63,829 nt of DNA, filler included, from Octopus bimaculoides (GCF_001194135.2; 7 parts of 6 records of this genome joined end to end with filler, not necessarily neighbours in it), one strand, 5' to 3'; numbered from the whole stretch's first letter, positions 28,807-43,898 are shown. Made by a program: numbers and translations. Notes: generated by a model not told the origin, from the letters alone.

Positions 28807-31198
28807 NNNNNNNNNNNNNNNNNNNNNNNNNNNNNNNNNNNNNNNNNNNNTTAATTAATTAANNNNNNNNNNNNNNNNNNNNNNNNNNNNNNNNNNNNNN
28901 NNNNNNATATATACATACACACACACACATATACATACGTATACATATATATATATTTCAACAAGTATTACGCATATGCTGTTTACACACTTACCCACAC
29001 ACATACACGTGTGTGTGTGTGTGTGTGTGAGAGAGTGTGTGTGTGTGTTTGTGTGTGTCTGTGTGTGTGCAATTCTGTGATAGCGAGTAGTCATAACTCA
29101 TATTTTTTACCTTAGACATAATTAGAAATAGGAGCAAATTACGCCATACTATGACAACCGTAAACTAATTAGATGCATCTTATTTCGAAACAACTTGCGG
29201 CTATCTTTAATTAACAGAAAATGCTATTCAAGTATGCTTTTCAACAGGAGATATGATATATATATGTATGTGTGTGTGTGTTTGTTTGTGTATATGTGTG
29301 TATAAATGTATGTATGTATATATATATATATATATATAAGTGTGTGTGTGTATTTATGTATTTATGTATGCATGTATATATACAGATACGTAACAGCATA
29401 CATATGCGTGAGTGTTACCTGTTTTATAATGAGCATTTATCTAAGCTTACAGTGCGGTTGATGAATTTGATGGGTTTTGCGTGACTGCAAATAGCAATTT
29501 TAAAATTTTATGGATTAAATTTGTGGTAGGGCAAATACTTCAAATATAACATTAATTTAAAATCTTACATACACTCGCACACACACACACACACTCATAT
29601 GTATATANNNNNNNNNNNNNNNNNNNNNNNNNNNNNNNNNNNNNNNNNNNNNNNNNNNNNNNNNNNNNNNNNNNNNNNNNNNNNNNNNNNNNNNNNNNNN
29701 NNNNNNNNNNNNNNNNNNNNNNNNNNNNNNNNNNNNNNNNNNNNNNNNNNNNNNNNNNNNNNNNNNNNNNNNNNNNNNNNNNNNNNNNNNNNNNNNNNNN
29801 NNNNNNNNNNNNNNNNNNNNNNNNNNNNNNNNNNNNNNNNNNNNNNNNNNNNNNNNNNNNNNNNNNNNNNNNNNNNNNNNNNNNNNNNNNNNNNNNNNNN
29901 NNNNNNNNNNNNNNNNNNNNNNNNNNNNNNNNNNNNNNNNNNNNNNNNNNNNNNNNNNNNNNNNNNNNNNNNNNNNNNNNNNNNNNNNNNNNNNNNNNNN
30001 NNNNNNNNNNNNNNNNNNNNNNNNNNNNNNNNNNNNNNNNNNNNNNNNNNNNNNNNNNNNNNNNNNNNNNNNNNNNNNNNNNNNNNNNNNNNNNNNNNNN
30101 NNNNNNNNNNNNNNNNNNNNNNNNNNNNNNNNNNNNNNNNNNNNNNNNNNNNNNNNNNNNNNNNNNNNNNNNNNNNNNNNNNNNNNNNNNNNNNNNNNNN
30201 NNNNNNNNNNNNNNNNNNNNNNNNNNNNNNNNNNNNNNNNNNNNNNNNNNNNNNNNNNNNNNNNNNNNNNNNNNNNNNNNNNNNNNNNNNNNNNNNNNNN
30301 NNNNNNNNNNNNNNNNNNNNNNNNNNNNNNNNNNNNNNNNNNNNNNNNNNNNNNNNNNNNNNNNNNNNNNNNNNNNNNNNNNNNNNNNNNNNNNNNNNNN
30401 NNNNTATATATATATATATATGTATATACTCATATATTTATATATATGTGTACGTGTTGTGTACATGTATACAAATGTTTGTATATGTAAGTGTGTGTAT
30501 ATATATATATATATATGCATATTCAGTTACATTATATGTACCTCGGTAATATTGGATTATTATTCTTGACAGTTGACCAATAACAAAGCACTGATTTCCT
30601 TGCACAACTATGTTAAACACTTAGTTTACTGCTGCATCATTTCTTTTATTAATATTTACAATAATTACCCTTTCCTTCTAGTCTGCTATAGAATATTAGC
30701 TTATATCTCATGATACAATCGCCCGTCCTCTAATGAAACACACAATGAAAACTGAGCTGCATATTTGACCATAAGCAGTATTACATGTTTTTTTTTTTTC
30801 TAAGAACGAGAAACTTATTAAAAACTTTGTATACCGTTTATAGAGTCATTTACATTATGATACATGATTATAGATAAGATATATTGCTGCTGCATTTTAC
30901 TTGCCATCTACTAGTTATTTTGCGCATGCTAAGTCAGATAAATTTTAGGTGAAATGCACTCAAGAAAATATCTTTATGAGTTACAACATTTTTATTTTCT
31001 TTAAAAAAATCTACTAACAGCGACATATGAGGGTTGCAATGACTAATGACGTTTTTAATCTGTTCTATAAGCAATTTATTTTTAAGTGCTGGCATCGGAA
31101 ATATTACCGCACATAAAGTATGTTTGTTGAATAAATTATTGAAGTGTAAAGAACAAGATAATATTTGAAAATCATTTGTCAATGTCTTTTGTATTTAG

Positions 31199-31225
31199 GA
31201 AGCCTGAATTTCGACTTCCTTTGAT
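31199..31225 (+). CDS. Candidate 27-nt alternative exon (phase-1 reading xGA-SLNFDFL*; phase-2 reading KPEFRLPL)
   Basis: Acceptor gtcttttgtatttag|G, donor GAT|gtaggt, downstream ACUAAC/GCAUG cluster. Host gene unknown; no transcript evidence. Confidence 0.5.
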
Positions 31226-31314
31226 GTAGGTTAAATAATAAATAAGAGATAATTTTCCTGGAAACCTATTTGACAATATGGCTACCTGGAAATTGTAGCA
31301 GCCAACACACCGTG

Positions 31315-31519
31315 ACTAACACGCATGGATGCCTTGTATTTTTCATTATGTTAACGATTTACTAACATCATGTAACTTTACTGCTATACAAACTACTAAC
31401 AGCATGACAAGACATATATTACTGTTCACCAAAACTAACCGCATGATGGCTTCGAAACCATAACAATTTGCATGACTTTGTGAAAAATCATATTAACATT
31501 AAGCATTACTAACCGCATG
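31315..31519 (+). promoter_or_regulatory. RNA-level regulatory cluster: 5x ACTAAC (QKI/STAR) paired with GCATG (Rbfox)
   Basis: ACTAAC at 31315, 31361, 31395, 31434, 31508; GCATG at 31323, 31402, 31441, 31515; TGCATG at 31469. Confidence 0.75.
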
Positions 31520-32039
31520 GGGCTTTTTATATTCTTTATCATTATAGAATTGCTCGATGACAAGAATTCATTATGTAATATTTGTTATTTCAAACAAGAT
31601 AAATACAGTATTTACAAAATTCATCCACATAAATATGTGTAACAAATTGGTAATAAATATAATGAAATATGTATGATAGATTTGAAATTATTAACTCTCA
31701 GAGATTTACAAAAATCTTTGAGAAGAATTGCTGGTTATATATGTTTCTCTTTTCTTCGCATATTACTTAAACACTATTTTGTGAATAATTGAAACATGAA
31801 TATATTCCTTTGGAAATGTATCGCAGTATTTATTCATAAGAAATATGAAATACGGAAATAGGATTGAAAATACAATTCATAGATAGAAGCAAAAATGCAC
31901 ATATGAGTGTGTGCGTGTGTGTATAAACATATGTATATATGCATATACACAAATATATATATAATACATACTTTAAATGTTCAATATCTTTTGATAATTA
32001 TGCATAATTGCTTTATATATATGCACTGTGCATAATACT

Positions 32040-32161
<122 letters not shown>

Positions 32162-33097
32162 GTTTATATAATACTATGGCAAGATGGAAAGTATTGTCAT
32201 ATTAATGGGCCCAGTGTATAACGCAAATCTTAAGTAATAAGATCATTAATTTTAGGGCCGTTATCTACATCACATTATCATAAAAATTAAGGAACTCAAT
32301 GCTAGTATTATTTTAACGAAATTATGTTGAAATTGAAACTTATTTCCACTAAATTTAAATAAAAGGACTTGGAATTTTACCAGTAGATTATGATTTACTC
32401 GGCCATCATTCAGCAAATGCATCCTGAATAGCACTGTCCGAGAACACGATGGTTATTTCCATTCTAGCATTGTACCTAAATAACGCATAATCAAATTAAT
32501 GCCAAGTTCAGTATATCTTCCATTTCACAAGTTATTCGAAACTAAAATAGAATATATTGTAAAACAGTATAAAAGCTGCATAAATAAGGATAAAATGTAT
32601 TATGTTGGTCAATCATATGATAATTTCGATAAATTACAAATACACATTCTTTATTAAAGGATAAATTTTTTTAGTAAGCAGACCATCATAATATCATGAA
32701 TAAATACATTAAAAATGGATGAGTATAAAAGATAGAGGAATGGATATCAGTGGCCACATATCCACGAATTCATCCACTATCCAATAAATATTTTCCCAAT
32801 GTTCCAATGTTTAAATTTCAATTCTTCACAAAATTTCTAATATTTATTCATTTATCTGCCAAAGAGCATACGTAATATATATANNNNNNNNNNNNNNNNN
32901 NNNNNNNNNNNNNNNNNNNNNNNNNNNNNNNNNNNNNNNNNNNNNNNNNNNNNNNNNNNNNNNNNNNNNNNNNNNNNNNNNNNNNNNNNNNNNNNNNNNN
33001 NNNNNNNNNNNNNNNNNNNNNNNNNNNNNNNNNNNNNNNNNNNNNNNNNNNNNNNNNNNNNNNNNNNNNNNNNNNNNNNNNNNNNNNNNNNNNNNNN

Positions 33098-33129
<32 letters not shown>

Positions 33130-34215
33130 TACATAAATACATACATACATACATCCATACGCACACCAGACCTGGAGTGACAATATTCATGTTAAACAAT
33201 ACACCTAGGAAAAGCTTTTATATTCATCAGAGCTTTCATCTTATTCCTTTGTATTTCTTTTTACTTTGTGATCTGGAATAGTTTATTCTTAAAGATATTA
33301 TGGAGAAGATGAATGCATTCATATGAAATATCTCAAGGGGGTAGTGTGCTCCATTGCAATGCCTTTATGCAAAATCTGAAGTTTTCCTTTCGAGCTCAAT
33401 CGTGCTCTCCCGCCTTGAATATATGTGTTACCTCTCTATAGACAAAATATTGGATTTTTATGTTTATACGTCATTTACCAATGTGTCTGTTACCTGGAGA
33501 GATTTGGCGAAAGCACTGCTGGGAAAACGTTGCTAACTCCGACGTTAATAAAGCGTTCATTTTTCCTCAAGATGTTATATCCTACCGAAACTGTCCGTCG
33601 AGGGATGCTACAGTTTTCCCTTTGAACATCTAGCTTCCTATCAGATTATATTATTTCATCACTTTCTCTCTCATAATACTTCATTTCTGGTGAACTCAAG
33701 CGTTCGGCATGGTTCCCCACTCTCTTCCTTAGTACAGCAATCACTTACTTGTCACCAAGTCAAAAAGCGACTATTTATAAAGAATATACTAAACTCCATG
33801 CATAACGAATATTCTCCAAACTAGCATCATGTATACGCAACCAACAGAATAATCCATACCAGTACTCGTTCTAGGAACTATCCAAAACAACGAGCGCAAT
33901 GACTTGTCTTACAAAAACATCTATTGAGCATAAACATCTATTGAACATAAACAGCACTTAACAACAGCATTCACAATACTTCCAATTATAATTTCTATTA
34001 TATAACCTTCATTATAAAGGAGAATATGTCCAGGATTGAAAACCGTTTACAGAAAAAAAATCACGTTGAAAATGCAGACACTTTTAATTAAGTCCAGGAA
34101 AACATTTTGACACATTAAAGGAAACGTTAATCCCACTCATGTGAAAGTGTTTATGAGGGGCATGTGCGGTGCCCATTTCAGGTTCAGCGACTATATATAT
34201 ATTTATGCATATTTA

Positions 34216-34282
<67 letters not shown>

Positions 34283-34478
34283 GCATATATATGAAAGTAT
34301 AATTTTATAATCTAAATTTAATCAGAATTTAAAATATAGAGACATACGGCAAATTTTTAGCAGCCCATGCTTACTTTCGTCTTGACAAATTTACATTGTT
34401 TTTGTGTCATGTTATATTAAACTAACAACTAACAAACTGTTTTTTTTCTTTCTGCACAAATATTCGTACTTTCTTCAG

Positions 34479-34492
34479 ACCGCTACATATAA
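34479..34492 (+). CDS. Candidate alternative 3' exon start (phase-1 reading xAC-RYI*)
   Basis: Tandem ACTAAC branch-point motifs at 34421 and 34428, long pyrimidine tract, ttcttcag|A acceptor at 34478. Confidence 0.3.
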
Positions 34493-34744
34493 TCAACGTC
34501 ATTTCAATTAATTTTACACTTCCAATTTATTGTTTCATTAATGCTATCTAAATGAAAGTTATTTTTTATATGTTTTAACCTCCAGTGTTACTATTAACTA
34601 TTATGGAAATAAATATGCATTTAATTAATAAAGTATGGGAAACATTCTAATGTTTAATTACGTATTAATGAATATATTATATTGTAACCCATATGAAATA
34701 GTTTGTAAAGAGTTGGAATACGCAAGTTCACGTATTGCGATAGA

Positions 34745-35085
34745 CAGTGGCGGAGTGGCCGGGTTGCCAACTTGCCCGATGGCAAGTGGATCCCTGCACC
34801 ATTAGAGTTCATATATGGGGATCCATGGTATTATCTAAGGGACGCATCCCCTCGTTTTTTAGAATGTTTTCTTCACTCCTGGAAGAATGCATTAATCATT
34901 TCAGCTTGGCTGTGTTTGTAGACAGTTGAAAAGAATACTTTTAGCAAAACAAAAAAAAAAAGAAATAGATGATCGCATTATAGTTGCGGGTGGGCCCCCT
35001 TATAGTCGCAGTGGGCCCCCTTGTAGTTGCAATGGGCCCCCTTAGTCTTCTGGCAAACAATATTTTTAGACCCAGTCCGCCACTG
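34745..35085. mobile_element. hAT-like MITE (341 bp)
   Basis: TIRs CAGTGGCGGAGTGG / CCAGTCCGCCACTG (13 of 14 complementary); 8-bp flanks GCGATAGA vs GTGGTAGT (5/8, decayed TSD); three ~21-bp GGGCCCCCTT subterminal repeats. Confidence 0.8.
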
Positions 35086-36846
35086 GTGGTAGTGATTATG
35101 TGCAAATACATACGTATTTACACACTGGGTGTGTCTGTTAGTGAAGTGTTTCTTAGGGCAATTTCGAGACACGGTAATCGATCTATACCCTAGAAACTGA
35201 GAGTCAGTGTACATCCGTGAAGAATAACGGCTAAAAAGCACTTCCATACTTCCCAAACCCAGGAACTCCCGAACTGCATATATATATGCAGGCGGGGCTG
35301 TGTAGTATGTATGTATGTATATTTATCAACCCATGTAATTAATTAATTAACGAGCAAATTCTTTAAATTTATAAATATCAACAGCACAGTAATATGATAC
35401 GTATAATAGCATCACCGACTACGAAATAAACCACTCACGTAATACAATATGAATGTATACATTTGTATGTATACATATGTCGTCACTCGTATTGTAACTG
35501 AAATGGTGAAAATATTTGACAGCATATCAGCCTGCATTCATACCATTACAATAACTATAATATATATTTTCCAATATTTTGGATGCATCTATCATTTCTT
35601 TAAATGAGTTCGCATCATAATAAGTCATTGCAAAAATTGCTGCCAAACAAAAGCTCAACGATTTTGTAAATCCTAACATATTGACACATGTTATTTGAAG
35701 CTTTAGTTTCATAGTTACGAGATCATATATTTTGCACTAGTGTGGAGTAAGCTAATTTAATTGCAAAATATTTAATGCAAGAAAAAACCAACATATCACG
35801 TTACATTGTTACATATATATTCATTATTAATCATAATATGTATTTACTAGACAAATCATGGAGAAACATTTTAGCTATGAAACAAACCATCTGTAAGTTC
35901 ACCTTAATGTCTCTATTTGATTTTGTCCTTTATTTAAAGGGAAACGGCATTTGGATAGCATTATAGAAAGGAAAGTTTAAATTTGAAAGTCATTTATTTT
36001 GGGTTTCATTTGTATATTTCCATAAATATGCTAACAGGTATACATAATGCGTACATAATGTGTATATATATATATATATATATATGTATATANNNNNNNN
36101 NNNNNNNNNNNNNNNNNNNNNNNNNNNNNNNNNNNNNNNNNNNNNNNNNNNNNNNNNNNNNNNNNNNNNNNNNNNNNNNNNNNNNNNNNNNNNNNNNNNN
36201 NNNNNNNNNNNNNNNNNNNNNNNNNNNNNNNNNNNNNNNNNNNNNNNNNNNNNNNNNNNNNNNNNNNNNNNNNNNNNNNNNNNNNNNNNNNNNNNNNNNN
36301 NNNNNNNNNNNNNNNNNNNNNNNNNNNNNNNNNNNNNNNNNNNNNNNNNNNNNNNNNNNNNNNNNNNNNNNNNNNNNNNNNNNNNNNNNNNNNNNNNNNN
36401 NNNNNNNNNNNNNNNNNNNNNNNNNNNNNNNNNNNNNNNNNNNNNNNNNNNNNNNNNNNNNNNNNNNNNNNNNNNNNNNNNNNNNNNNNNNNNNNNNNNN
36501 NNNNNNNNNNNNNNNNNNNNNNNNNNNNNNNNNNNNNNNNNNNNNNNNNNNNNNNNNNNNNNNNNNNNNNNNNNNNNNNNNNNNNNNNNNNNNNNNNNNN
36601 NNNNNNNNNNNNNNNNNNNNNNNNNNNNNNNNNNNNNNNNNNNNNNNNNNNNNNNNNNNNNNNNNNNNNNNNNNNNNNTATATATATATATATATATATT
36701 TAGATATATATATATATTTAGATATATATATAATTTACGATGAATTTCTTGACCATACAATTATATTCCATAATGTATAACCTTTTATGAAGGACTATTT
36801 TAATAAAACATAGACTCAATTCATTCTGCCATATTCCTCTTTTCAG

Positions 36847-36902
36847 GTTTGAAGCGCTGTGTGATAATTTCAATCTCAAGTCATCGATCTGAAACAATTT
36901 GA
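36847..36902 (+). CDS. Candidate alternative 3' exon (phase-1 xGT-LKRCVIISISSHRSETI*; phase-2 FEALCDNFNLKSSI*)
   Basis: Strong acceptor gccatattcctcttttcag|G at 36846; all three frames stop within 56 nt. Confidence 0.3.
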
Positions 36903-38651
36903 AGCCAAAATAATTTACCATGTATCATTTTTTATTATATGTTTCTCTGAAGAGTTCCCTTAAAGCGGGTTTCAGAAAGAAACCATTAACTGATGTAGTC
37001 CATGAAATTTGAATCGACGGAAATTCACAATATTAAATTTAAACTGGGTTTTTTTTCTTTCATCATTTTTTCTCTTACTTCGTAGTCTGAAAAAGTCCAT
37101 GCATTTTTTATAAGCCGCTAATTAATTATCAATGAATACATTATTTGACACCCTTGGTAATATAAATTTGCGCTAATAATATGTCTAGTGTGTAGTTGAA
37201 TAATATTACATCTGCAATTATGCATAACATTTCACTGAAGTATTAAAACCTGCGTACAAATTTAGTTTACTTGTTTCATTATATTTAACAATTAATTATT
37301 ATTTCTTAGTTTACTCAAAGATAATCATATAAGTAATCCACGCTTGAATTTAGTGTGATGATGAAGCAATTGTACTCACGTATATGATATCTTAGTCATA
37401 TTTAAGACGGAAGCGTATAAAGACTCTTGAACAACTTAAAGTACATGATATGTAATAGAAACATGTTAGTACATTGTTAGGGGTAAGATAAAGTTAATCT
37501 GATCGAATTGACTTTTAAACAAAAGGACACAGTTTGAACGGAAATGAGTATAACCAATATCGCAATAAGAATGCGTAAAGAGAAATTAATTGTAGATTGT
37601 GTTTATTTTTAGACACAATGTCATACTTAGCCACGCTACATTTTTTTGCAAGACACCTATTATAAACACGATTTTTTGCATTGCTAAACATGGTGTATTC
37701 ATAGTAGATTGCTTTCAATTATGAGGCAAAATTGCACCGCCCATGCAATGAAATTGATATTGGATTTTCAAAGCTTTTCTTCATACTGTAGATATTTACA
37801 GCTCGTATAATGTGTTACTCTGCATGAATCATTATGAGCCTCATCATACGTGGTTTTCAAACAGCTTCCGTATACTTAACATCAACGAATTTTACTAGAA
37901 GAAGTCCATATAGTATTTTATAATCAATATACAAAACACTGCAGGGTTATACTTTAGCTCTAATGAAAATTAGCTATTTATTTAAATTCATATTAATATT
38001 GTTAATACAAAAAGTAGTTATTTCATCAGGAAAAAATAGAACGGTATCAGTTTAAATACATTGAATAATTAGTTCCTCATTAGTTGTAAATGAAAATGTC
38101 TGCGGTCAAATTACATTTTGATGGTTCCGATATCAATGATATTAGGTCGAGTAATTACCTTTATAAAAACGAAAAAAATTGATTCCATGCAATTATTGTT
38201 ATTTGGCCAGGACAAACGTAATTGCACATATTTTAATGTTATATACAAAGGGGTAGATAATGAACTGCAAAGAGGAGGCTTTAGTTTATTCTTAATTTCA
38301 CATTGTGAGATTGAAATGATGTAGTAGGCAAGGGTAAACTGAGTAGAAGTCAAACGTTTTTTACCAAGAGTAGTTGTTTGTGTGTCTATTTCAGAAATCA
38401 ATATTATATTAATATATCGGTATTATACTATTCGGACCACTTTTGCGAGCTTCATTATGGAATAAGATTTAGAACATAACTCTAAGACATTAACATAATC
38501 AAATATATTACAACAATGTAAAGCTTTCAGCAAACTTAACAACGGTATACAATAGAAAATATAATATATAACCTTTAATATGAAGAAGCAAGTTCGTGTA
38601 TTAGGCTCACTTAAAACAACTCTACATAATGAAATAACAATAAATATTGTA

Positions 38652-38701
<50 letters not shown>

Positions 38702-39544
38702 ATAAGGGCATTACTATACAGTAATGCCTCACGCTTAGAGGGACTTTATAAGTAAAAACTACCAAAATAAGCACTTATTTACCGATCGCGAGGGAATGCA
38801 ACTTTCAAAGCTAACCTCCTAAAAACTTTTAACTTAACGGCAAACCACTGGTTTCATAACTAATACAGCAAAACTATGCAGTAAGCTGCATCTTTTGTTC
38901 ATCAGTGCACGTATGGTCAAGACACATAAAGAATAAACAAAAATCAACATACCCTGATGTACCCAACACATTACAATGACTCCTGTTCATCCTTATATAT
39001 CCGTGAAAGGGTCGGGCTTTTCAAGTTACACTTCGGCAACATGTGCTTTTACAGAATAATATTCAGCACTGAATATATTCTAATTATTTATAATATAATA
39101 TAAGGATAAAATCTTTATAAGAATTTATCAAGTAGTCAGCGTGAAAAAACCTCATAAGGAAAAAAAACATCATTTTTTTCCATAAATATATATAATATAA
39201 TTTATATAAGGGCATTACACACACACACACACACACACACATACATACACACTCGCACGTCCCCTCCACATATATATATATAAGAAGAAATTTTGCCGGA
39301 AGTTAACGGGAATTTAACAACAAGGAATTTAACAGTAGGATATGAGAATCGTGATTTACTCTCTGTAAGAAAATACCAAGCGAGATTTACCAACAGCCAT
39401 TTACACTCTGAGTCCTATCACCTGGGGGTCAAATAAGGTACTTGTCAGCACTAAAATAGGTATGATTTACAGCTCTCTTCTGAACCAAATTTTCAGACAT
39501 GAAACCATTATTATTATTATAGATATTTCTTTTGTTATCGTTAT

Positions 39545-39728
39545 TAAGGTTGTGAGCTTATTGAATCGTTAACAAAGAGGATAAAATGCTTAGCGGCATT
39601 TTGTTCGACGATTTACATTTCATCATTTCGAGGTCGATAAAATAACTGCGAGTGAGCACTTGTGTCGATGTAATCGACTAAAACCCGTCCCCGAGATTAC
39701 TGGCCTTGTACCAACATTTGAAACCAAT
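39545..39728 (+). mobile_element. SINE family A (old)
   Basis: Diverged match to family A. Confidence 0.7.
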
Positions 39729-39863
39729 TTTATAACACAATTATTCATTGTTTTATGATCAAAGACTTGAGAACAAATTGCCGCACAAATTTTCTTATGT
39801 AGAACTTATACTAACAACGGAATGTTTATGTAGATGTTTACTAACAACTGCTCCTTATTTCAG

Positions 39864-39939
39864 AGCATGACGATGAATTCGATGCGACCACCTCTCTTCT
39901 TGCCTAAAAATAAAACTGAAAGTAATTTTTTGTTTCGCG
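39864..39939 (+). CDS. Candidate 76-nt exon (phase-1 xAG-HDDEFDATTSLLA*; phase-0 open SMTMNSMRPPLFLPKNKTESNFLFR)
   Basis: TACTAAC at 39809 and 39839, acceptor ctccttatttcag|A, donor GCG|gtatgt. Confidence 0.5.
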
Positions 39940-41387
39940 GTATGTCATTTTGCTCCTAATGTGTATATATATGTAAATATATATTCTGCTTTGTTTCCAT
40001 CACTGTTTATTTCTTTTATTATTTTATTTTTTGTTTTACACTAACAAAGTATTGATATATTTTTTATTTCATGAATTTTATTTTTTCTTAAACTTTTCGT
40101 TAATTTTTCGTTTTACTTTATTTTCTTTATATATGTTTTTTTACACTTATTTAATCCTAGAATCTGTGTTTGAATGCCAGGCTTTATACTAACCCGGATG
40201 CCTAATTAACAGGTGCCATTTCTAATTTTTCATTCTTGCCCCGTATGAAGCTACCTTATCGGTAGGTCTCTTTCAATTTTTAGATGTTTTACACTTTAAC
40301 GCATATGCCCAAATACTTTATATACGTAAAGTGAAATATATATATATATATACATATATATATANNNNNNNNNNNNNNNNNNNNNNNNNNNNNNNNNNNN
40401 NNNNNNNNNNNNNNNNNNNNNNNNNNNNNNNNNNNNNNNNNNNNNNNNNNNNNNNNNNNNNNNNNNNNNNNNNNNNNNNNNNNNNNNNNNNNNNNNNNNN
40501 NNNNNNNNNNNNNNNNNNNNNNNNNNNNNNNNNNNNNNNNNNNNNNNNNNNNNNNNNNNNNNNNNNNNNNNNNNNNNNNNNNNNNNNNNNNNNNNNNNNN
40601 NNNNNNNNNNNNNNNNNNNNNNNNNNNNNNNNNNNNNNNNNNNNNNNNNNNNNNNNNNNNNNNNNNNNNNNNNNNNNNNNNNNNNNNNNNNNNNNNNNNN
40701 NNNNNNNNNNNNNNNNNNNNNNNNNNNNNNNNNNNNNNNNNNNNNNNNNNNNNNNNNNNNNNNNNNNNNNNNNNNNNNNNNNNNNNNNNNNNNNNNNNNN
40801 NNNNNNNNNNNNNNNNNNNNNNNNNNNNNNNNNNNNNNNNNNNNNNNNNNNNNNNNNNNNNNNNNNNNNNNNNNNNNNNNNNNNNNNNNNNNNNNNNNNN
40901 NNNNNNNNNNNNNNNNNNNNNNNNNNNNNNNNNNNNNNNNNNNNNNNNNNNNNNNNNNNNNNNNNNNNNNNNNNNNNNNNNNNNNNNNNNNNNNNNNNNN
41001 NNNNNNNNNNNNNNNNNNNNNNNNNNNNNNNNNNNNNNNNNNNNNNNNNNNNNNNNNNNNNNNNNNNNNNNNNNNNNNNNNNNNNNNNNNNNNNNNNNNN
41101 NNNTTTTATGTTTATATGAGTGTAAAAGAGAGTTTTAACATATTTTAAACTATTTCTCGCTCTGCTTTCTGAATATGAATATGGTTTTGCACAATTGTAT
41201 AATATAAAGATATAAATAAAAACTAAATTCTCTTTCCAGTAACGTAAACTTTTAAAGTGATTTTTAAATGTTTGCATGTATATGTGCATTTATAGGGGGA
41301 ATTCACAAAAAAAAAACAACAGATGAAGTCAGGTGGTGTAGAAAACAAATAGATGTATTAGTATAACGCTCAGGAATTGAAAAAGTT

Positions 41388-41423
41388 TTTTAACGTTTCT
41401 AGCCTACGCTCCTCCACAGAAAG
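41388..41423 (-). ncRNA. Minimal type I HHR motif, A6U variant, damaged stem II
   Basis: CTTT-CTGTGGA-G-GAGC-gtag-GCTA-GAAA-CG-T-T-AAAA; paralog of 22491-22526. Confidence 0.6.
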
Positions 41424-41725
41424 GAACACAGAAAGAAACAAGGAAAGAAACAAGGAGAGAAAAAATGTGTGTAGTTGTCAGCGATCTACCTCTGTGTGTT
41501 GCCTCTGAGTACGTATGTATGTGTGTGTGTGTGTGTGTCTGTGTCTGTATGTGCTTGTGTGTGTCTTTGTGTGCATATGCATGAATTTATATAGATGTGT
41601 ATACCTATCATTTAAGGAATTGTAAAATATAAAAACATATTTAGCATCACAAGATCTATGGTGTTTACTTAGCGAATGAAAATAAAACTTATTATTACCC
41701 TCCCTGCAATCTCTCTCCCTTTTTC

Positions 41726-41782
<57 letters not shown>

Positions 41783-42001
41783 ACATCTATGTTCTTTTAA
41801 TATGGGATAAAATGTTTTCAAAAATTTCATCCATTATGAAAATTATAAACAATTACAAATAAGGGCAAAAAATAGAAAATTCTATGGCAATATGCTGAGA
41901 AATAAAATGTAAATCGTCAACCATCACAATTTACACCACTATGAATACACATTGTGCTGAATCCAGGAAAGTAAGCTAACAGAATTTTTTCAAATGCGTT
42001 A

Positions 42002-42051
42002 TCTCTATATTTCGGGATTAATCAAACGGATTTTCCCCTCATCAGTAGAGA
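42002..42051 (-). ncRNA. Type I HHR, copy 1 (core intact, stem III deleted)
   Basis: TCTCTA-CTGATGA-GGGGAAAATCCGTTTGATTAATCCC-GAAA-T-A-TAGAGA. Confidence 0.75.
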
Positions 42052-42488
42052 ATACTATAAGAAATAAATCAAATGTTTACAAGCATCCATGGAAAAAAGC
42101 AGAAGCAAATGTCATGTGTACACATAAGTACCCCAATTATATCTAAATATAAAATTTTGTAGTGAGCCTCAGCACACGTGGGATTGGTCAGGAACCACAA
42201 CTTAGAGTGGACATCAGTCCCGATGTGAATGGCAATAAATTTAGTTTTAATACAGGATACATTTTTTTTCAAAAACTTCAACAAGTGGCCCGCATATTAA
42301 AATATCTTTAAGGGAGAAAATTATAAACAATTATAAATAGATATGGGCAAATGAAAAAAAAATCTATACCAATATGCTGAGAAATAGACTTTAAATCGTT
42401 AATCAGCTCATACAATATCCATCAGTATGAATACACGTCGTGCTGAAATCGAGGAAAGCAAGCTAACGGAACTTTTTTAAATGCGTTA

Positions 42489-42546
42489 CCTCTATATTGA
42501 ATCAATTTCGGTATTAATCCAACGGATTTCCCCTCATTAGTTGAGA
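42489..42546 (-). ncRNA. Type I HHR, copy 2 (G5A lesion)
   Basis: TCTCAA-CTAATGA-GGGGAAATCCGTTGGATTAATACC-GAAA-TTG-ATT-CAA-T-A-TAGAGG. Confidence 0.75.
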
Positions 42547-42931
42547 ATACGATAAGAAATAAATTAAATACTTACAAGCACCCATAGAAAAAAGCAGAAG
42601 CAAAAGTCATGTGTACACATAAGTACCCCAGTTATATCTAAATATAAAATTCCGTAGCGAATCTCAGCACACATACTTTTGCTTCTGCTTTTTCTCCACT
42701 TGGTGAAATTTTTGAATGATATTTATCCTATACTAAAAGTAAATTTATTGCCATTCACTTCGAGACTGGTGACCACTCTAAGTTGTGATTCCTGACCAAT
42801 CCCACGTGTGCTGAGGCTCGCTACGGAATTTTATATTTAGATATAACTTGGGTACTTATGTGTACACATGACTTTAGCTTCTGCTTTTGTCCATGGGTGC
42901 TTGTAAGTATTTCATTTATTTCTTATCATAT

Positions 42932-42990
42932 TCTCTACTGATGTGGTGCAAATCCGTTGGATTAATTCCGAAATTGATTCAATATAGAGA
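42932..42990 (+). ncRNA. Type I HHR, copy 3 (A9U lesion)
   Basis: TCTCTA-CTGATGT-GGTGCAAATCCGTTGGATTAATTCC-GAAA-TTG-ATT-CAA-T-A-TAGAGA. Confidence 0.78.
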
Positions 42991-43171
42991 TAACGCATTT
43001 TAGAAAATTCTGTTAGCTTGCTTTCCTGGATTCAGCACAATGTGTATTCATAGTGGTGTATACTGTATATGGTGATTGACGATTTAAATTCTATTTCTCA
43101 GCATATTGACATAGACATTTTTTCATTTGCCCTTATTTATAATTATCTCTCTTTCTCTCTCCATTTATCTA

Positions 43172-43210
<39 letters not shown>

Positions 43211-43387
43211 NNNNNNNNNNNNNNNNNNNNNNNNNNNNNNNNNNATATATATATGTATGTATATATATATATATATACTCGATTCAAACATGAACAAGCA
43301 AGAAAAAACTCGAGCAAACAACAACGCGAGGACGTGGAATAAGTACAGTGTTATTGGACGCACAGGTGTGGAAACAAAAGAAAGAGG

Positions 43388-43422
43388 ATTTAACGTTTCA
43401 AATGGAGCTCTTCGTCAGAAAT
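43388..43422 (-). ncRNA. Minimal type I HHR motif, stem II decayed
   Basis: ATTT-CTGACGA-A-GAGC-tcc-ATTT-GAAA-CG-T-T-AAAT; the 3' arm GCTC appears to have decayed to ATTT by transitions. Confidence 0.6.
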
Positions 43423-43571
43423 ATAGGAAAAGTCCAAAGAAGGGAAAACAGAGAAAGAATATATATATATATATTTATACATTCTTTTAATACAGTTCTA
43501 TATTTAAGAGATGAGGAATTATGTACATTATTTACATTTGATAAATATATGTCCTCATCTTGCTTGTTGTT

Positions 43572-43617
43572 AACACTACCTTTCGGCTGATATACCCTGC
43601 AGCCATCATCAGGTGTC
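43572..43617 (-). ncRNA. Minimal type I HHR motif with intact catalytic core
   Basis: GACAC-CTGATGA-T-GGCTG-cagggtatat-CAGCC-GAAA-GG-T-A-GTGTT: stem I 5 bp, stem II 5 bp, GUA triplet. Confidence 0.8.
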
Positions 43618-43665
43618 TTGGGGAAATGTCGATCCTGAGTTCTCATTAATAAGGTATTTTTCAAA

Positions 43666-43789
<124 letters not shown>

Positions 43790-43898
43790 CGGGTCCCTNN
43801 NNNNNNNNNNNNNNNNNNNNNNNNNNNNNNNNNNNNNNNNNNTTAATTAATTAANNNNNNNNNNNNNNNNNNNNNNNNNNNNNNNNNNNNNNNNNNNN

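What the first reader, a model, noticed from the sequence alone, without database searches (positions are those of the whole stretch)
41839..43144. Retrozyme-like array: ~480-bp repeat with one type I hammerhead per unit; consensus ribozyme is complete
Seen: three copies of a ~450-480-bp non-coding unit (41839-42288, 42317-42672 with a 478-bp period, and inverted 42696-43144), each with an HHR at the same position. Consensus: TCTCTA-CTGATGA-GGGG-AAATCC-GTT-GGATT-AATCCC-GAAA-TTG-ATT-CAA-T-A-TAGAGA, giving a 6-bp stem I, a two-part stem II, a 4-bp stem III and an AUA cleavage triplet. Each copy has a different lesion (stem III deletion; G5A; A9U), which implies descent from an intact master. Known: non-LTR retrozymes are ORF-less tandem repeats with one type I HHR per monomer that self-cleave and circularise into circRNAs. 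Inference: this is a cephalopod retrozyme family with a ~480-nt monomer. I do not know of a description for Octopus but cannot check the literature here.
Basis: partly seen in the sequence, partly recalled or inferred. Interest (0 to 1): 0.9.

Follow-up and report, generated by a model that had tools for sequence, protein, structure and literature searches.

The report
Decayed hammerhead-ribozyme retroelement (retrozyme) insertion
A 1.35-kb stretch holds three mutated copies of a ~480-base non-coding mobile repeat that once carried a self-cutting hammerhead RNA. It is a dead relic of a type of element already known in animals, including other molluscs, so it is real but fairly ordinary.

Summary
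Three copies of a ~450-490-nt ORF-less, AT-rich unit lie at 41839-43144, 84-90% identical to each other. Each carries a hammerhead-derived segment at the same position.

None of the three passes a hammerhead (HHR) descriptor. Rfam reports no hammerhead, even at E<=10. Copy 2 has G5A, copy 3 has A9U, and copy 1 lacks the 9 nt of stem-loop III. The two-of-three consensus is a canonical type I HHR. The same descriptor found nothing in 20 Mb of composition-matched random sequence.

The layout is not a plain array. On the minus strand there is a 5'-truncated copy, then a full copy, then a 36-nt stub of a further unit. A full copy lies head-to-head on the plus strand, joined through a 30-nt filler with microhomology at both ends. 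Microsatellites abut both outer ends. This is the composite layout described for Penelope-like element (PLE) insertions.

Best reading: an old, dead insertion of a non-autonomous, PLE-dependent element of the non-LTR retrozyme kind.

I could not test for other genomic copies, RNA circles, self-cleavage or the source organism. I rate it a new member of a known kind, of modest interest.

The parts
41726..41790 (.). (TCTA)n microsatellite directly abutting the left end of the insertion. Putative target sequence.
   Evidence: TRF reports 16 copies at 93% matches.
41794..41829 (-). Copy 0: a 36-nt stub equal to unit positions 9-44. It is the start of a further unit downstream of copy 1 and ends at the microsatellite.
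   Evidence: BLAST match at 80.6%. It is also inverted-repeat pair I7 with the 5' end of copy 3.
41839..42288 (-). Copy 1: a full-length unit.
   Evidence: 85.8% identity to copy 3 over 451 nt. Alignment A1.
42002..42051 (-). HHR of copy 1. Both catalytic boxes and the 6-bp stem I are intact. The 9 nt of stem-loop III (15.2-16.2) are deleted and the loop-closing pair of stem II is broken. The result has a 'min-HHR' architecture. The equivalent cleavage site is 42008|42007.
   Evidence: The min-HHR definition is in PMC4209133.
42291..42316 (-). A spacer of about 25 nt between the end of copy 2 and the start of copy 1. The copy 1 to copy 0 junction lacks it.
   Evidence: Alignment A1 and the sequence.
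42317..42672 (-). Copy 2: 5'-truncated at unit position 111, in tandem upstream of copy 1.
   Evidence: 88.4% identity over unit 111-445. Alignment A1.
42489..42546 (-). HHR of copy 2. It has G5A (window 42538), an A.A mismatch in stem I and a G.A mismatch in stem II. The equivalent cleavage site is 42495|42494.
42669..42698 (+). A filler of about 30 nt at the head-to-head junction, equal to unit positions about 168-200. It shares microhomology with its neighbours on both sides (CACACAT on the left, TCCA on the right).
   Evidence: BLAST match of unit 169-193 at 92%. The junction was read. Together with copy 2 it forms the hairpin that Rfam scores as a weak microRNA-like match.
42696..43144 (+). 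Copy 3: a full unit, inverted relative to copies 1 and 2. It is the copy closest to the local consensus, with 3.6% private differences.
42932..42990 (+). HHR of copy 3. It has A9U (window 42944), a U.U mismatch in stem II at 10.3/11.3 and one extra base in stem II. Stems I and III are intact. The equivalent cleavage site is 42984|42985.
   Evidence: Rfam gives no hammerhead match at E<=10 on 86 nt.
43145..43205 (.). CT-rich low-complexity sequence and a (CT)13 microsatellite abutting the right end of the insertion. A (TA)n tract and an assembly gap follow.
   Evidence: TRF reports 43178-43203 at 100% matches.

Best explanation
This is one old, composite insertion, about 1.35 kb long, of a short non-autonomous retroelement. 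The element is about 460-496 nt, has no ORF, and carries one type I hammerhead ribozyme per unit. It belongs to the non-LTR retrozyme kind, which is now regarded as a non-coding derivative of Penelope-like elements (PLEs).

Inferred life cycle of the active family, drawn from the literature and not shown here:
1. Multimeric transcripts are cut by the HHR after the AUA triplet.
2. The monomers are ligated into circles.
3. A PLE reverse transcriptase and GIY-YIG endonuclease copies the RNA into a nicked target, often a microsatellite.

What the locus itself shows:
- The left arm contains more than one unit length. It runs truncated copy 2, full copy 1, then a stub, spanning two uncut HHR sites. 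The template was therefore a multimer, or a circle read more than once.
- Neither outer end lies at the HHR cleavage site.
- Copy 2 is truncated at its 5' end.
- The two arms meet head-to-head through a 30-nt piece of the element's own sequence, with microhomology on both sides. This fits template switching during reverse transcription.
- Microsatellites abut both outer ends.

Since insertion the copies have drifted neutrally. All three ribozymes are disabled, so the locus no longer makes self-cleaving RNA.
For: -
- No ORF is conserved between copies and Pfam finds nothing.
- GC content is 34%.
- The consensus is a canonical type I HHR, and the descriptor gives 0 hits in 20 Mb of random sequence.
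- The core lesions are private to single copies.
- The unit cycles directly into the next unit with no coding body between them, at both the copy 2 to copy 1 and the copy 1 to copy 0 junctions. The full element is therefore about 480 nt.
- Partial tandem, an inverted copy, an extra short piece and microsatellite targets are the described PLE insertion pattern (PMC8557442).
- Pairs of HHRs 100-700 bp apart on opposite strands are described for PLE remnants (PMC4209133). Here h2 and h3 lie about 390 nt apart.
- The long helix II (4+5 bp, with an internal loop) resembles PLE-type HHRs.
- Retrozymes share their phylogenetic distribution with PLEs and resemble PLE pseudo-LTRs in sequence (bioRxiv 10.64898/2026.07.22.740005).
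- Microsatellites cover only 11.5% of the piece, yet both ends abut one.
- The consensus monomer folds better than shuffled sequence, at z=-2.68.
Against: - There are only three local copies. No other copy could be retrieved from anywhere, so family size and the existence of intact masters are unknown.
- RNA evidence was not obtainable.
- Rfam does not call any copy a hammerhead.
- There is no covariation.
- The real genomic monomers are not more structured than shuffled sequence, with z of +0.15, -0.89 and -1.32.
- The monomer of about 460-496 nt is longer than the ~170-400 nt reported for metazoan retrozyme circles.
- No PLE reverse transcriptase or endonuclease lies in the 15-kb piece.
- The piece is rich in microsatellites. 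About 36% of positions lie within 60 nt of one, so the flank argument is only suggestive.
- The two tandem junctions differ by about 25-35 nt. A single rolling circle does not predict that.
Confidence: 0.7

Rival explanations
1. The copies are remnants of an autonomous Penelope-like element. They would be 5'-truncated 3' ends (pseudo-LTR regions) of a 3-4 kb coding PLE, not a dedicated short element.
For: - The HHR has a PLE-like long helix II.
- Copy 1 has a min-HHR architecture.
- HHRs lie on opposite strands about 390 nt apart.
- There is 5' truncation, an inverted copy and microsatellite flanks.
Against: - Copy 1 is bounded upstream by the 3' end of copy 2. It is followed downstream by the same sequence that starts copies 1 and 3. 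One full cycle is therefore about 450-490 nt with no room for an ORF.
- No reverse transcriptase or GIY-YIG endonuclease signal lies in the piece.
Confidence: 0.15
2. It is a fragment of an HHR-bearing satellite DNA, like newt satellite 2, amplified by DNA-level mechanisms and locally rearranged by inversion. No retrotransposition is involved.
For: - There is head-to-tail repetition of an ORF-less unit with one HHR per unit.
- Such satellites are the classical home of type I HHRs.
Against: - There are only about 1.8 units plus a stub in tandem.
- A sharp 5' truncation, a microhomology-flanked filler and direct abutment on microsatellites point to an insertion event.
- The literature now treats these satellites as retrozymes anyway.
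Confidence: 0.08
3. It is an ordinary interspersed repeat, SINE-like or unclassified, in which a hammerhead-like consensus is a coincidence or a product of consensus building.
For: - No copy is intact.
- Rfam reports no hammerhead.
- There is no covariation.
- The HHR segment is not conserved above background.
Against: - The descriptor gives 0 hits in 20 Mb of random sequence, against a hit in a 477-nt consensus.
- All eleven box nucleotides, the 10.1-11.1 and 15.1-16.1 pairs and three helices are present in the right order.
- Each core lesion is outvoted by the two other copies.
- There is no tRNA-like head.
Confidence: 0.04

Closest known systems
Metazoan non-LTR retrozymes (Cervera & de la Pena 2020, PMC7229834), e.g. 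the Mytilus galloprovincialis 350-390-bp repeats
   Same: The unit is ORF-less and low in GC. It is repeated head-to-tail and has one type I HHR per unit. The host is apparently a mollusc, though that is unverified.
   Different: - The monomer is about 460-496 nt, longer than the 170-400 nt reported.
- Helix II is long and in two parts (4+5 bp).
- Helix III is a stable 4 bp with a triloop.
- Only about 2 units are in tandem, plus one inverted copy.
- All local ribozymes are mutated.
- Expression as circles was not tested.
Penelope-like elements and their pseudo-LTR hammerheads (Cervera & de la Pena 2014, PMC4209133; Craig et al. 2021, PMC8557442)
   Same: - The insertion has the same architecture: a partial tandem, an inverted copy, an extra short piece and microsatellite targets.
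- Helix II is long.
- HHRs lie on opposite strands a few hundred bp apart.
- Copy 1 equals a min-HHR.
   Different: - There is no reverse transcriptase or endonuclease ORF, and the whole element is about 480 nt.
- The consensus HHR has a real helix III, unlike the minimal PLE motifs.
Amphibian satellite 2 and the Schistosoma Sm-alpha hammerhead repeats
   Same: Both are type I HHRs embedded in short, non-coding, repeated genomic units.
   Different: - The amphibian helix III has 1-2 bp and needs dimers, whereas here it has 4 bp.
- Sm-alpha is SINE-like, whereas no tRNA-like head is found here.
- No long array is present here.
Rfam Hammerhead_1 (RF00163), with 235 hits reported in the giant squid genome (PMC6962438)
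   Same: Same ribozyme class and same topology (open helix I).
   Different: None of the three local copies scores against any Rfam hammerhead model, even at E<=10. The consensus could not be scanned with the tools on hand.

Membership tests
Non-LTR retrozyme | A type I hammerhead motif at the same place in every repeat unit | tested here: met
   An HHR-derived segment sits at the same unit position in copies 1, 2 and 3. The topology has an open helix I.
Non-LTR retrozyme | The HHR is intact in all units. This is the 'active retrozyme' definition of Li et al. 2026. | tested here: not met
   The lesions are G5A, A9U and a deletion of stem-loop III. The descriptor gives 0 hits in the piece. Rfam gives none. 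Only the consensus passes.
Non-LTR retrozyme | Short tandem repeats, from dimers to multimers, with monomers of about 170-400 bp | tested here: inconclusive
   Tandem repetition is present: a truncated unit, a full unit and a 36-nt stub. The monomer of about 460-496 nt exceeds the published range.
Non-LTR retrozyme | Low GC content (<45%) and no coding capacity | tested here: met
   GC is 0.34. The longest ORF is 71 aa, is not conserved between copies, and has no Pfam or protein-database match.
Non-LTR retrozyme | The monomer RNA is highly self-paired | tested here: inconclusive
   The consensus monomer gives z=-2.68. The genomic monomers give z=+0.15, -0.89 and -1.32.
Non-LTR retrozyme | Transcribed, self-cleaved and present as circular RNA | not testable with these tools
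No wet assay is possible.
Non-LTR retrozyme | A multicopy, dispersed family in the genome, co-occurring with autonomous PLEs | not testable with these tools
   No eukaryotic genome collection is on hand. Searches of proteins, metagenomes, viral contigs and prokaryotic genomes found nothing. The literature reports Penelope elements in Octopus (PMC13282606), but the source organism is unverified.
Autonomous Penelope-like element | An ORF with a reverse transcriptase and a GIY-YIG endonuclease between the pseudo-LTRs | tested here: not met
   One unit cycles directly into the next. There is no such ORF in 28907-43798.
Autonomous Penelope-like element | Insertion architecture: a partial tandem, an inverted copy (5'-truncated, as described), a short extra piece and a microsatellite target | tested here: met
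   compared with the description in PMC8557442. One departure: here the truncated copy is the upstream tandem one, and the inverted copy is a full unit. The 30-nt filler lies at the internal junction, not at an outer end.
Rfam hammerhead families (Hammerhead_1 and others) | A score at or above the gathering threshold | tested here: not met
   No hammerhead match at E<=1 on the piece, at E<=10 on 1361 nt, or at E<=10 on 86 nt around copy 3.
SINE with hammerhead (Sm-alpha type) | A tRNA-derived or other small-RNA-derived head | tested here: not met
   ARAGORN finds no tRNA. There is no small-RNA Rfam match in the unit.

The most novel reading that the evidence does not exclude
The fossil locus marks a still-active family, not yet described, in a cephalopod. 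Its monomers of about 480-490 nt would be the largest among metazoan non-LTR retrozymes. Its ribozyme would join a PLE-type long helix II to a stable helix III able to cleave as a monomer. It would yield abundant circular RNAs in octopus tissues.
Probability: 0.25. Interest if true: 0.5.

Novelty: new member of a known kind. Interest (0 to 1): 0.3.

Why it matters
If intact relatives exist, this would extend retrozymes and their circular RNAs to cephalopods. I found no such description in the searchable literature. It would also add a family whose insertion scars tie retrozymes to the PLE integration machinery: a partial tandem, an inverted copy, a microhomology filler and a microsatellite target. 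That link is currently argued mainly from shared distribution and sequence similarity in vertebrates. On its own, the locus is a dead transposon relic and has no consequence for the host.

Tried and rejected
1. Rfam scans at three scales found no hammerhead or any other ribozyme. They returned only spurious microRNA-like hits on microsatellites and on the junction hairpin.
I therefore made no read-level or circle test and did not attempt one by another route.
3. I tried to fish out other copies through spurious ORFs of the unit in the 5.8-billion-protein collection. Six word-sharing candidates came back and none scored. I ran no further search on the antisense frame.
4. Exact-pattern scans found nothing: the HHR 31-mer in metagenome and viral contigs, and an invariant 23-mer in metagenome and prokaryotic genome contigs.
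5. Covariation has no power with three copies, and no compensatory pairs were seen.
6. No target-site duplication can be read in the low-complexity flanks.
7. SINE, tRNA-head and coding explanations are rejected.
8. TRF does not report the ~480-nt period, because fewer than 2 units with indels are present.

Full report
**Observation**

The region 41790-43150 holds three large copies and two small fragments of one non-coding unit. BLAST of copy 3 against the piece gives the following:
- Copy 3 at 42696-43144 on the plus strand (unit positions 1-449).
- Copy 1 at 42288-41851 on the minus strand (85.8% over 451 nt, with homology running on to about 41839).
- Copy 2 at 42672-42337 on the minus strand (unit 111-445, 88.4%).
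- A 36-nt stub at 41829-41794 on the minus strand (unit 9-44).
- A short plus-strand match at 42669-42692 (unit 169-193).

The repeat finder gives the same picture, with direct spacings of 478-495 nt and inverted arms that are 84-94% complementary. Nothing else in 28907-43798 belongs to the family.

The phrase 'array of three' simplifies the layout. Read in the sense of the ribozyme, the minus strand carries, in order:
- a 5'-truncated unit (copy 2);
- a spacer of about 25 nt;
- a full unit (copy 1);
- the first roughly 40 nt of another unit (copy 0).

The plus strand carries one full unit (copy 3), head-to-head with copy 2.

**The ribozyme**

The HHR segments lie at 42002-42051 (-), 42489-42546 (-) and 42932-42990 (+). 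Alignment confirms the three lesions:
- Copy 2 reads CUAAUGA, which is G5A at window position 42538.
- Copy 3 reads CUGAUGU, which is A9U at window position 42944.
- Copy 1 lacks 9 nt.

The copies also carry helix mismatches: A.A in stem I and G.A in stem II of copy 2, U.U in stem II of copy 3, and C.U at the loop-closing pair of copy 1.

The two-of-three consensus is UCUCUA-CUGAUGA-GGGG(N)AAAUCC-GUU-GGAUUAAUNCC-GAA-AUUG-AUU-CAAU-A-UAGAGA. It has every canonical feature:
- boxes C3-A9 and G12-A14;
- the G10.1-C11.1 and A15.1-U16.1 pairs;
- A at position 17;
- a 6-bp helix I, a 4+5-bp helix II and a 4-bp helix III.

I wrote an RNAmotif-style descriptor to test chance. It hits the consensus once. 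It hits the real piece zero times on either strand. It gives zero hits in 20 Mb of first-order Markov sequence with the unit's composition. The motif is therefore not chance, and no local copy is intact.

Rfam reports no hammerhead at E<=1 on the piece, at E<=10 on 1361 nt, or at E<=10 on 86 nt around copy 3. The lesions and the unusually long helix II are the likely reasons.

From established hammerhead mutagenesis (my own knowledge), G5 is essential and changes at A9 strongly reduce cleavage.

Copy 1 needs a nuance. Its deletion removes exactly positions 15.2-16.2 and leaves GAAA-U-A|UAGAGA with both boxes and helix I intact. That is the 'min-HHR' architecture described for PLE pseudo-LTRs. 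Single min-HHR motifs showed no detectable cleavage, and dimers showed little (PMC4209133). The deletion is flanked by an AAT microhomology, so a slippage event after insertion is the simpler reading.

**No sign of selection on these copies**

The three copies show no compensatory pair, and most changes break pairs. The HHR segment differs by about 10% pairwise, against 11-16% for the rest of the unit. Private differences from the local consensus are 3.6-7.4%.

If the host is an Octopus, the calibration in PMC13282606 applies (JC 0.065 is about 18 My and JC 0.09 is about 25 My). That would put the insertion very roughly 10-20 million years ago. This estimate is conditional on an unverified host.

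**What kind of element**

- The unit has no conserved ORF and no Pfam match.
- It has no relative among 5.8 billion predicted proteins.
- Its GC content is 34%.
- It has no tRNA-like head.
- Copy 2's 3' end runs into copy 1's 5' end, and copy 1's 3' end runs into the same 5' sequence again. One full cycle is therefore about 450-496 nt with no room for a coding body.
- The distance between the cleavage sites of copies 2 and 1 is 487 nt, or 496 nt with the deletion restored.

A ~480-nt ORF-less unit with one type I HHR per unit, repeated head-to-tail at low GC, matches the definition of metazoan non-LTR retrozymes (PMC7229834). Those include 350-390-bp repeats in a mussel. The monomer here is longer than the 170-400 nt reported.

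The test for a self-paired RNA is equivocal. The consensus monomer gives z=-2.68. The real sequences give z=+0.15, -0.89 and -1.32.

**Insertion scars**

The head-to-head junction was read. Copy 2 breaks off at unit 111. A filler of about 30 nt follows (42669-42698, unit ~168-200, plus orientation). Copy 3 then starts at unit 1. The filler shares CACACAT with the broken end of copy 2 and TCCA with the start of copy 3. This is what template switching during reverse transcription, or microhomology-mediated joining, would leave.

The left end abuts (TCTA)16, and the right end abuts CT-rich sequence and (CT)13. Microsatellites cover 11.5% of the piece, and 36% of positions lie within 60 nt of one. 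The flank argument is therefore suggestive only.

Craig et al. describe PLE insertions as partial tandems, often with an inverted 5'-truncated copy and a 30-40-bp extra 'tail', biased towards microsatellites (PMC8557442). Cervera and de la Pena note pairs of PLE hammerheads 100-700 bp apart on opposite strands, and long helices II. Li et al. 2026 argue that animal retrozymes are non-autonomous PLE derivatives.

The locus fits that picture with one departure. Here the inverted copy is a full unit, and the truncated copy is the upstream tandem one.

Neither outer end is at the HHR cleavage site, and the left arm spans two uncut sites. The template was therefore a multimer, or a circle copied more than once. 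The two tandem junctions differ by about 25-35 nt, which argues against a single homogeneous circle or reflects later indels.

**What could not be done**

I did not try to reach reads by another route.

No eukaryotic genome collection is available. Pattern scans of metagenome, viral and prokaryotic contigs found nothing. Family size, intact masters, covariation across many copies and the host species therefore remain open.

**Comparison and novelty**

I found no paper describing retrozymes or analysing hammerheads in cephalopods. The giant squid genome paper does list 235 Rfam Hammerhead_1 hits (PMC6962438). Octopus genomes are reported to hold Penelope elements.

The finding is a new member of a known kind, seen here only as a fossil.

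**Verdict**

- Best explanation, at confidence 0.7: a decayed, PLE-style composite insertion of a retrozyme-type element.
- Interest: 0.3.

Noticed in passing
42002-42051 (-): Copy 1's 9-nt deletion removes exactly stem-loop III (positions 15.2-16.2) between two AAT repeats. It leaves both catalytic boxes intact. This converts a canonical HHR into the 'min-HHR' architecture known from Penelope-like elements.
   Followed up: partly
42585-42698: The 30-nt junction filler pairs with its inverted counterpart inside copy 2 to form a hairpin of about 110 nt. Rfam scores this hairpin weakly as plant microRNA families (MIR6024, MIR6019). These hits are spurious.
   Followed up: yes
41839-42672 versus 42696-43144: Copies 1 and 2 against copy 3 form an inverted repeat of about 450 bp with arms 84-94% complementary. 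A read-through transcript would fold into long double-stranded RNA, a possible substrate for small-RNA or RNA-editing pathways.
   Followed up: no
42955-42985 (+) and the equivalent part of copy 2: In the mutated copies 2 and 3 the 3' strand of helix II pairs with helix III (GUUGGAUUAAU with AUUGAUUCAAU) in the minimum-energy fold. This competes with the active hammerhead fold. The consensus does not use this pairing.
   Followed up: partly
29608-30404, 32884-33097, 36093-36678, 40365-41103, 43211-43244: There are five assembly gaps (runs of N). Four of them have (TA)n-type microsatellite sequence at one or both edges. This suggests a short-read assembly breaking in simple repeats.
   Followed up: partly
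28907-41600, e.g. 33096-33166, 31895-31963, 30434-30531: All Rfam matches to mir-297, mir-466, mir-3149 and similar families are far below the gathering scores. They fall on (TG)n/(TA)n simple repeats. They are artefacts, not microRNA genes.
   Followed up: yes
43667-43787 and 32041-32159: There are two long trinucleotide microsatellites of the same type, (TTA)40 and (ATT)n. About 11.5% of the non-N bases of the piece are tandem repeats with a period of 10 or less.
   Followed up: partly
43290-43660: This is a non-repetitive stretch with slightly more balanced composition, to the right of the gap. Its ORFs of 77-88 aa have no significant Pfam match. Its nature is unknown.
   Followed up: partly
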